DNA of 63,734 nucleotides, filler included, from Octopus bimaculoides (taxonomy: Eukaryota), in NCBI RefSeq assembly GCF_001194135.2. It is 5 parts of 5 records of this genome, joined end to end, with 100 filler letters (N's around TTAATTAATTAA, not from the genome) between each part and the next. Parts side by side here need not be neighbours in the genome. Positions count along the whole stretch, not along the records: positions 42,302 to 54,968 come from NC_068994.1; 4 more parts are not named here. One strand, 5' to 3'. The position numbers were made by a program, and so were the translations under genes. Of the stretch, positions 54,229 through 54,303 are shown piece by piece. Positions within the stretch are counted from its first letter, which is position 1; each line of letters begins with the position of its first letter. A model generated the notes under the pieces. It worked only from the letters and a program-made list of their open reading frames with translations, was not told the DNA's origin and did not search any database.

Positions 54229-54303
54229 TTTCCTGCTGATGAGAGCTGCCCAAGCAAATTATTTTATTTTGCTGAGAATAGCTTGAAACCATGGTTCAGG
54301 AAA
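54229..54303 (+). ncRNA. Intact minimal type I hammerhead ribozyme
   Basis: UUUCCUG CUGAUGA GAGCU [loop with AGCAAA/UUUGCU helix] AGCUU GAAA CCAUGG UU CAGGAAA. All core nucleotides present, 7-bp stem I, palindromic ACCAUGGU stem III, predicted cleavage after GUU at 54296. Confidence 0.85.

What the first reader, a model, noticed from the sequence alone, without database searches (positions are those of the whole stretch)
54229..54303. Fully intact hammerhead ribozyme in non-coding DNA
Seen: complete catalytic core (CUGAUGA...GAAA...UU), 7-bp stem I UUUCCUG/CAGGAAA, 5-bp stem II GAGCU/AGCUU extended by a 6-bp AGCAAA/UUUGCU helix, and a self-complementary ACCAUGGU stem III. Established: Penelope-like elements carry minimal type I HHRs whose short palindromic stem III favours dimeric cleavage. 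Inference: a potentially active self-cleaving RNA from a young non-autonomous element or a retained host function; most other HHRs in the window carry core or stem defects.
Basis: partly seen in the sequence, partly recalled or inferred. Interest (0 to 1): 0.88.

Follow-up and report, generated by a model that had tools for sequence, protein, structure and literature searches.

The report
Lone type I hammerhead ribozyme motif
A real, almost consensus copy of the self-cutting "hammerhead" RNA motif sits in repeat-rich non-coding animal DNA; it is the kind retrotransposon-like elements scatter through invertebrate genomes, so it is genuine but ordinary.

Summary
Rfam Hammerhead_1 matches end to end at 27.3 bits, below its 34-bit gathering score, mainly because a 28-nt hairpin is inserted in loop 2. 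My own descriptor finds this one site and none in 1500 shuffles of the piece.

"Fully intact" is slightly too strong. The usually conserved G10.1-C11.1 pair is a G.U wobble, and the cleavage-site base is U rather than the consensus C.

Helix III is the palindrome ACCAUGGU. It cannot close well as a hairpin, and two copies are predicted to form the classic double hammerhead (-44 to -46 kcal/mol against 2 x -17.8).

No second copy, tandem repeat, flanking direct repeat or RT/GIY-YIG reading frame is present in the 12.7-kb piece. An assembly gap lies 53 bp downstream.

Best reading: a solitary retroelement-derived hammerhead of the non-LTR retrozyme / Penelope-like class, probably in a cephalopod genome. 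It is competent on paper, but its activity is unproven. This is a known kind, so interest is low.

The parts
54229..54235 (+). Helix I, 5' strand UUUCCUG (positions 2.7-2.1)
   Evidence: Pairs with 54297-54303. Base-pair probability is 0.4-1.0 in the 75-nt context.
54236..54242 (+). Catalytic core C3 U4 G5 A6 U7 G8 A9 (CUGAUGA)
   Evidence: Exact match to the Rfam Hammerhead_1 consensus core.
54243..54284 (+). Helix II: GAGCUG/UAGCUU, 6 bp, starting with a G10.1.U11.1 wobble. It continues through internal loop CCCA/GAGAA and an inserted hairpin AGCAAA-UUAUUUUAU-UUUGCU (54253-54273). The 3' loop bases AAUA (54277-54280) match the consensus loop 2.
   Evidence: RNAfold structures. The Infernal alignment shows a 28-nt insertion in loop 2 with AAUA aligned.
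54285..54287 (+). Core G12 A13 A14
54288..54295 (+). Helix III palindrome ACCAUGGU (A15.1...U16.1). As a hairpin it gives 2 bp plus a CAUG tetraloop. As an intermolecular duplex it gives 8 bp.
   Evidence: Sequence. Rfam annotates these 8 positions as 4 nested pairs. The dimer fold uses the palindrome in trans.
54296..54296 (+). U17, the cleavage-site nucleotide (triplet GUU). The predicted scissile bond is 54296|54297.
   Evidence: Hammerhead numbering applied to the alignment.
54297..54303 (+). Helix I, 3' strand CAGGAAA (1.1-1.7)
54221..54308 (+). Possible distal extension of helix I: AUCU 54221-54224 pairs with AGAU 54305-54308, across an asymmetric internal loop UGGC (54225-54228) / U (54304). 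This loop is a candidate 'loop 1'.
   Evidence: Predicted in the 101-nt fold. Whether it makes tertiary contacts with loop 2 is inference only.
54169..54220 (+). 20-bp hairpin with a 12-nt loop, ending 8 nt upstream of helix I
   Evidence: It accounts for much of the strong folding z-score of the region.
54021..54103 (+). Upstream segments complementary, with several G.U pairs, to the hammerhead. 54021-54051 pairs with 54265-54296, and 54093-54103 pairs with 54240-54253. This gives an alternative, hammerhead-inactive, closed fold of 54021-54296.
   Evidence: The + strand folds at -92.8 kcal/mol (z -6.8), against -71.8 (z -4.1) for the - strand. The duplex energy is -22.4 kcal/mol, reached by 1 of 1000 shuffles, but two other windows of the piece come close. 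Suggestive only.

Best explanation
This is a solitary genomic copy of a metazoan type I hammerhead ribozyme. It is of the class carried by non-LTR retrozymes and Penelope-like retroelements, left in repeat-rich non-coding DNA.

If the + strand is transcribed, the RNA can form helices I and II around an intact catalytic core. Helix III is only the palindrome ACCAUGGU, so the productive form is most likely a double hammerhead. In that form, two copies pair through helix III and swap their helix I strands, and each copy cuts after U17 (54296), leaving a 2',3'-cyclic phosphate and a 5'-OH.

In the DNA as assembled there is no partner copy in cis. This locus would therefore cut only poorly, either as a monomer (2-bp helix III with a tetraloop) or with transcripts of sister copies from elsewhere.

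Shown: the motif, its statistics, the predicted dimer, and the absence of a partner or coding element in the piece. Inferred: the retroelement origin, the mode of cleavage, and weak or no activity of this particular copy.
For: - Complete core and three helices in type I order.
- Full-length Hammerhead_1 alignment, 27.3 bits, E 3.7e-5.
- One descriptor hit against 0 in 1500 shuffles.
- The dimer MFE of -46.2 kcal/mol has exactly the double-hammerhead topology. The explicit double-hammerhead structure scores -44.2, and the ensemble gives about -9.5 kcal/mol for dimerisation.
- Helix III of the type '2 bp plus palindromic tetraloop' is what the literature describes for invertebrate retrozyme hammerheads (PMC7229834). 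Dimeric action is documented for such motifs (PMC4209133; PMC6155905).
- The same ACCAUGGU helix III occurs in a canonical type I hammerhead (L010) found in public metagenome contigs. Two sister copies (L026, L031) have a degraded helix I.
- Low GC (0.38) and a strongly self-paired + strand context fit retrozyme-like RNA.
- 235 Hammerhead_1 loci were reported in a cephalopod genome (PMC6962438).
Against: - No tandem unit, second hammerhead or flanking direct repeat is present.
- No RT or GIY-YIG reading frame is present in 12.7 kb.
- Membership in a mobile element therefore rests on analogy, not on copies.
- The score is below the Rfam gathering threshold.
- In transcripts of 131 nt or more, alternative folds beat the hammerhead fold by 2.5-9 kcal/mol and remove helix I.
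- G10.1.U11.1 and U17 depart from the consensus and may lower activity.
- Host identity is untested.
Confidence: 0.72

Rival explanations
1. The copy is one unit of a tandem retrozyme array, or the pseudo-LTR of a Penelope-like element. The partner copies or reading frame are hidden in the 10-N assembly gap 53 bp downstream, or lie beyond the end of the piece. The locus would then be an active, cis-dimerising ribozyme.
For: - There is a gap at 54357-54366 right after the motif, followed by (TA)n and (TG)n.
- Tandem and complex PLE or retrozyme insertions are known to break short-read assemblies, and some PLE clades insert into microsatellites (PMC8557442).
- The strongly self-paired 276-nt + strand domain ends exactly at the cleavage site.
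Against: - Nothing in the roughly 600 bp after the gap, or in the 12 kb before the motif, resembles the unit or an RT/EN frame.
- The sequence just 3' of the cleavage site is not repeated upstream, as it would be in a copy longer than one unit.
Confidence: 0.17
2. It is a domesticated host ribozyme with a cellular role, such as transcript processing. This would be analogous to the intronic HH9/HH10 hammerheads of amniotes.
For: All strictly invariant core positions are intact, and the stems are long.
Against: - No gene context was found. The surroundings are microsatellites, SINE-like repeats and gaps.
- No conservation data are available.
- The dimer-dependent helix III is typical of mobile-element hammerheads, not of the stable monomeric domesticated ones.
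- The best Rfam family is Hammerhead_1, not HH9 or HH10.
Confidence: 0.06
3. It is a chance match to the hammerhead consensus in AT-rich repetitive DNA.
For: - The Rfam score is below the gathering threshold.
- The folding energy is not better than that of shuffles.
Against: - There were 0 hits in 1500 dinucleotide shuffles, about 37 Mb of sequence, even with a laxer descriptor.
- My rough analytic extrapolation for the observed helix lengths gives well under one chance site per 2-3 Gb genome (own estimate).
- The E-value is 3.7e-5 even against all 4227 families.
Confidence: 0.04

Closest known systems
Canonical metazoan type I hammerheads of non-LTR retrozymes (coral, mussel, axolotl; Schistosoma Sm-alpha, newt satellite 2). 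Rfam RF00163.
   Same: - Type I topology and an identical catalytic core.
- A helix I of 6-7 bp followed by an asymmetric internal loop.
- AAUA on the 3' side of loop 2.
- A very short palindromic helix III that favours dimeric cleavage.
- Low-GC surroundings and a strongly self-paired flanking RNA.
   Different: - No tandem repeat was found here.
- A 28-nt insertion in loop 2 forms a hairpin.
- The 10.1-11.1 pair is G.U instead of G-C.
- The cleavage triplet is GUU instead of GUC.
- The score is 27.3 bits, below the gathering score of 34.
Minimal hammerheads (min-HHR) in the pseudo-LTRs of Penelope-like elements (Cervera & de la Pena 2014, PMC4209133)
   Same: - Helix II is longer than usual (6 bp or more).
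- There is no obvious loop-loop motif.
- The 15.2-16.2 region is palindromic and a dimeric mode is predicted.
- Such motifs are often found as dispersed single copies from truncated elements.
   Different: - Helix I is 7 bp, against the typical 4-5.
- There is no unpaired base between A9 and 10.1.
- The conserved G10.1-C11.1 pair is not kept.
- Helix III is present.
- No pLTR pair and no RT/GIY-YIG frame is nearby.
Type I hammerhead L010 (with sister copies L026 and L031) from public metagenome contigs Ga0126336
   Same: It has the same core and the same helix III sequence, ACCAUGGU followed by U17, in type I order.
   Different: - It has a compact 5-bp helix II with a 7-nt loop, and G10.1-C11.1.
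- Helices I and II have unrelated sequences.
- There is no evidence of direct kinship with the window's copy.

Membership tests
Hammerhead ribozyme, type I (Rfam RF00163) | Invariant core C3 U4 G5 A6 N7 G8 A9 ... G12 A13 A14 | tested here: met
   CUGAUGA at 54236-54242 and GAA at 54285-54287.
Hammerhead ribozyme, type I (Rfam RF00163) | A15.1-U16.1 pair, and position 17 is not G (NUH rule) | tested here: met
   A54288 pairs with U54295, and U54296 is position 17. The triplet is GUU, where the consensus has C17.
Hammerhead ribozyme, type I (Rfam RF00163) | Three helices, with helix I open-ended | tested here: met
   Helix I is 7 bp, and helix II is 6 bp plus a 6-bp extension. Helix III is a palindrome that gives 2-3 bp in cis and 8 bp in trans.
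Hammerhead ribozyme, type I (Rfam RF00163) | Conserved G10.1-C11.1 closing pair of helix II | tested here: not met
   The pair is G54243.U54284, a wobble. It is still a pair. C11.1-G12 is a CpG in DNA, so a C-to-T transition is a plausible origin (inference).
Hammerhead ribozyme, type I (Rfam RF00163) | Score at or above the curated gathering threshold (34 bits) | tested here: not met
   The score is 27.3 bits, and there is no hit in the gathering scan. The canonical hammerhead in L010 also failed this threshold, so the threshold is strict for such small motifs.
Hammerhead ribozyme, type I (Rfam RF00163) | Mg2+-dependent self-cleavage at the predicted site | not testable with these tools
   This needs in vitro transcription of monomer and dimer constructs.
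Hammerhead ribozyme, type I (Rfam RF00163) | Loop 1 - loop 2 tertiary contacts | not testable with these tools
   Candidate elements are present: an internal loop UGGC/U after 7 bp of helix I, and AAUA in loop 2. A hairpin is inserted in loop 2, and its effect is unknown.
Metazoan non-LTR retrozyme (PMC7229834) | Type I hammerhead inside short (150-450 bp) head-to-tail tandem repeats | tested here: not met
   No tandem or second copy exists in the assembled piece. Caveat: there is a gap 53 bp downstream.
Metazoan non-LTR retrozyme (PMC7229834) | Low GC (<50%) and a highly self-paired unit RNA of about 170-400 nt | tested here: inconclusive
   GC is 0.38. The 276-nt + strand domain folds at -92.8 kcal/mol with z -6.8, and it is the second most structured of 81 windows. 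However, the unit boundaries are unknown, and the long-range pairing is only marginally above background.
Metazoan non-LTR retrozyme (PMC7229834) | Expressed as circular RNA | not testable with these tools
   No transcriptome data were available.
Penelope-like element (PLE) | Reading frame with a telomerase-like RT and (in EN+ clades) a GIY-YIG endonuclease | tested here: not met
   No non-repetitive ORF is present. No Y/F-x-D-D or GIY...YIG motif is found in any of the six frames of 42302-54968. This was an ORF and motif scan only, so a heavily decayed remnant could be missed.
Penelope-like element (PLE) | Hammerhead located in direct flanking repeats (pLTRs) | tested here: not met
   No direct repeat includes the hammerhead region.

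The most novel reading that the evidence does not exclude
The 276-nt + strand-specific self-paired domain 54021-54296 ends exactly at the cleavage site, and the hammerhead carries a hairpin inserted in loop 2. On the most novel reading, this is a monomer of an undescribed cephalopod family of retrozyme-like circular RNAs. The stable closed fold would keep the ribozyme off, and the double-hammerhead form would switch it on during multimeric transcription.
Probability: 0.15. Interest if true: 0.35.

Novelty: new member of a known kind. Interest (0 to 1): 0.2.

Why it matters
It adds one more dispersed type I hammerhead to the thousands already catalogued in invertebrate genomes. Its main use is as a marker of retrozyme or Penelope-like element activity in this genome.

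It also offers a natural variant whose activity could be measured. It has a hairpin inserted in loop 2, a G.U pair at 10.1-11.1, and a GUU cleavage site.

It would matter more only if the host genome turned out to hold a family of such units expressed as circular RNA.

Tried and rejected
- **Rfam scans.** The gathering scan and the whole-piece E-value scans gave no hammerhead hit. They returned only spurious microRNA-family matches on (TG)n/(TA)n microsatellites. The hit appears only when a short stretch is searched.
- **Upstream half-motif.** TTTCCTGCCGATAAGA at 54121-54136 looked like a decayed second hammerhead. A local alignment score of 22 is reached by 52 of 300 shuffles, it has no helix II, and CCGAU belongs to a local hairpin. 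Rejected.
- **tRNA-derived SINE head.** The A-box and B-box-like stretch at 54046-54100 suggested a Sm-alpha-like SINE carrying the ribozyme. ARAGORN and Rfam find nothing tRNA-like. A T6 run at 54111-54116 would stop RNA polymerase III before the hammerhead. Not supported.
- **Exact-pattern scans of public collections.** A search for this hammerhead found 0 matches in metagenome and viral contigs.
- **Looser pattern scan.** This gave 41 loci, about the number expected by chance. Only L010 is a full hammerhead, L026 and L031 are sister copies with a degraded helix I, and L038 is a protein-coding repeat.
- **Locating the source contig.** Exact-product look-ups of two ORFs found nothing on record.
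- **Full-text search for sequence strings.** Strings from the motif and the neighbouring repeats were found in no paper.
- **Thermodynamic stability as evidence.** The motif's folding energy is no better than that of shuffles.

Full report

Yes. The sequence at 54229-54303 on the + strand reads UUUCCUG-CUGAUGA-GAGCUG...UAGCUU-GAAA-CCAUGGU-U-CAGGAAA. In standard hammerhead numbering:
- Helix I is 54229-54235 paired with 54297-54303, 7 bp.
- The core C3-A9 is 54236-54242.
- Helix II is 54243-54248 paired with 54279-54284. It is 6 bp, and the first and last pairs are G.U.
- Helix II continues through an internal loop (CCCA/GAGAA) into a 6-bp helix, AGCAAA/UUUGCU (54253-54258 / 54268-54273), with a 9-nt loop.
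- G12 A13 A14 are 54285-54287.
- A15.1 to U16.1 form the palindrome ACCAUGGU at 54288-54295.
- U17 is 54296.

Rfam's Hammerhead_1 model (RF00163) aligns over its whole length (positions 1-45) to 54230-54302 with 27.3 bits and E = 3.7e-5, when a 131-nt stretch is searched. The score is below the gathering score of 34. The alignment shows a 28-nt insertion in loop 2, which probably costs most of the difference (my reading of the alignment). Nothing is reported by the gathering scan or by scans of longer stretches, where the speed filters are stricter.

**2. Is it more than chance?**

I wrote a descriptor requiring CUGANGA, helix II of at least 4 bp, GAAA, helix III of at least 2 bp, U-H, and helix I of at least 5 bp.
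- It finds this site and no other on either strand of the piece.
- It finds no site in 1500 dinucleotide-preserving shuffles of the piece, about 37 Mb in total.
- A rough analytic extrapolation of my own, using the observed helix lengths, gives well under one chance site per genome of a few Gb.

The folding energy is not evidence. The 75-nt and 101-nt stretches fold no better than shuffles (z = -1.45 and 0.05).

**3. How intact is it?**

All strictly invariant positions are present. Two positions depart from the consensus.
- The normally conserved G10.1-C11.1 pair is a G.U wobble. Cervera and de la Pena list G-C as a hallmark even of minimal hammerheads (PMC4209133).
- The cleavage-site base is U, where the consensus has C.

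Both are C-to-U differences. C11.1-G12 is a CpG in DNA, so transition decay is a plausible cause, but that is inference. Abundant, expressed axolotl retrozyme hammerheads tolerate even a U.U mismatch at the base of helix II (PMC7229834). These changes therefore do not rule out activity. 'Fully intact' is a mild overstatement.

**4. How would it work?**

Helix III offers only A-U plus C-G around a CAUG tetraloop in cis. Pairing all eight palindrome bases within one molecule would leave no hairpin loop (three pairs would leave only 2 nt), which is too few to close a hairpin.
- Two copies co-fold to -46.2 kcal/mol, against 2 x -17.8 for monomers. The predicted structure has the classic double-hammerhead topology: helix III forms between the two copies, and each helix I forms in trans.
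- The explicit double-hammerhead structure, with A14 and U17 left unpaired, scores -44.2 kcal/mol.
- The ensemble free energies (-49.7 against 2 x -20.1) give about -9.5 kcal/mol for dimerisation. By my calculation this is a dissociation constant in the 0.1-micromolar range.

This suits two motifs on one transcript, or very abundant family transcripts. It does not suit a lone low-level transcript. This is the mechanism established for newt and viroid hammerheads and proposed for PLE hammerheads (PMC6155905; PMC4209133).

In isolation (75-101 nt) helices I and II dominate the ensemble. In transcripts of 131 nt or more, alternative pairings win by 2.5-9 kcal/mol and helix I is lost. Co-transcriptional folding could still allow cleavage.

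**5. Surroundings**

The piece is AT-rich (37% GC) draft animal DNA with four N gaps. It is dominated by tri- and dinucleotide microsatellites and short dispersed repeats.
- There is no second hammerhead.
- No tandem or direct repeat includes the motif.
- No other copy of 53650-54356 exists in the piece.
- There is no long non-repetitive reading frame.
- No RT (Y/F-x-D-D) or GIY-YIG motif occurs in any frame.
- A 10-N gap lies 53 bp downstream of the motif and is followed by (TA)n and (TG)n. A partner copy could therefore be missing from the assembly.

Just upstream lies a 20-bp hairpin (54169-54220). Further upstream, 54021-54051 and 54093-54103 are complementary to the two halves of the hammerhead, with several G.U pairs.
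- The + strand RNA 54021-54296 folds into a closed structure of -92.8 kcal/mol (z = -6.8). Its last pair ends at the cleavage site. The complementary strand reaches only -71.8.
- This 276-nt window is the second most structured of 81 in the piece. The first is a microsatellite.
- The specific long-range duplex (-22.4 kcal/mol) is beaten or equalled by 1 of 1000 shuffles, but two other windows of the piece come close.

I rate this as suggestive of a retrozyme-like, self-paired, ribozyme-masking fold. It is not shown.

**6. Comparison with what is known**

The motif works like, and on sequence criteria belongs to, the type I hammerheads.

Within that class it is closer to the canonical metazoan type carried by non-LTR retrozymes. 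It shares a short palindromic helix III, a helix I of 6-7 bp followed by an asymmetric internal loop, and the consensus AAUA in loop 2.

It is further from the minimal PLE hammerheads, which have a short helix I, a bulged base before 10.1 and usually no helix III. It does share their long helix II.

The defining genomic features of both element families were tested and not met in the available DNA: tandem units of 150-450 bp for retrozymes, and pLTRs with an RT/EN frame for PLEs. I therefore file it only as 'type I hammerhead, retroelement-type, solitary'.

Dispersed single motifs from truncated elements are the commonest state in animal genomes. A cephalopod genome paper already counts 235 Hammerhead_1 loci (PMC6962438).

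The neighbouring dispersed repeats (for example 42472-42527 and 51426-51481) resemble abundant octopus SINE sequences as I remember them. This is recollection only and could not be tested with the collections at hand.

**7. Related sequences elsewhere**

Exact-pattern scans for this hammerhead found nothing in metagenome or viral contigs. A looser pattern returned 41 loci, about the chance expectation.
- One locus (L010) is a complete canonical type I hammerhead with the same helix III, ACCAUGGU-U. Two sister copies (L026, L031) have a degraded helix I.
- L010 also fails the Rfam gathering score.
- L038 is a protein-coding repeat.

These loci show that this helix III recurs in animal-type hammerheads. 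They do not show kinship with the window's copy.

**8. Verdict**

The feature is a genuine but ordinary member of a well-known class, and its activity is unproven. Interest is 0.2.

The most novel reading still open is a monomer of an undescribed cephalopod retrozyme-like circular RNA with a loop 2 insertion. It needs the host genome and transcriptome to test.

Noticed in passing
window 54169-54220: A near-perfect 20-bp hairpin with a 12-nt loop lies 8 nt upstream of the hammerhead. It gives only weak sub-threshold matches to microRNA precursor models (mir-4536, 23 bits against a gathering score of 76).
   Followed up: partly
window 54046-54100: This stretch has tRNA-gene-like A-box (TAGTCACGTGG) and B-box-like (GGTTCTCAATC) motifs, which suggest a decayed tRNA-derived SINE head. 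ARAGORN and Rfam do not support it. A T6 run at 54111-54116 would terminate RNA polymerase III before the hammerhead.
   Followed up: yes
window 54121-54136: TTTCCTGCCGATAAGA repeats the 5' half of the hammerhead with 2 mismatches, 109 nt upstream. It is followed by GAAAA and the palindrome-like ACCGCACATGCGCGGT. The match is not statistically significant and there is no helix II.
   Followed up: yes
window 42472-42527 and 51426-51481; 49621-49673 and 53516-53568; 42826-42942 and 46536-46652: Three pairs of dispersed repeats have 95%, 75% and 85% identity. They are probably SINE or other interspersed-repeat fragments. From memory they resemble abundant octopus repeats, which hints at a cephalopod host (untested).
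   Followed up: no
window 45360-46400, 47400-49250, 51140-51230: There are very long compound trinucleotide microsatellites (AAT, GAT, GAA, GTT/CTG and similar). They create long artefactual ORFs of low complexity on both strands.
   Followed up: no
window 43895-43990, 44877-44950, 47000-47400, 54367-54447, 54580-54968: (TG)n/(TA)n microsatellites give many sub-threshold Rfam 'microRNA' matches (mir-297, mir-3149, MIR2646 and others). These are spurious.
   Followed up: yes
window 43989-44136, 48417-48492, 51827-51836, 54357-54366: There are four runs of N (148, 76, 10 and 10 bases), so this is a draft scaffold. The last run lies 53 bp downstream of the hammerhead and could hide a tandem copy.
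   Followed up: partly
L010 1244-1279 (+); also L026, L031: Metagenome contigs Ga0126336_* carry a compact canonical type I hammerhead (ggcaa-CUGAUGA-GACCC...GGGUC-GAAA-CCAUGGU-U-uugcc). Its helix III is the same as in the window. Two of the three copies have a degraded helix I.
   Followed up: partly
L009, L011, L021: Long eukaryote-like contigs from metagenomes carry CUGAUGA-G-A-ACUGGAU...AUCCAGU-C-GAAACCAUGGUU. This has a 7-bp helix II with a bulged base after 10.1, and almost no helix I. It is reminiscent of minimal PLE hammerheads.
   Followed up: no
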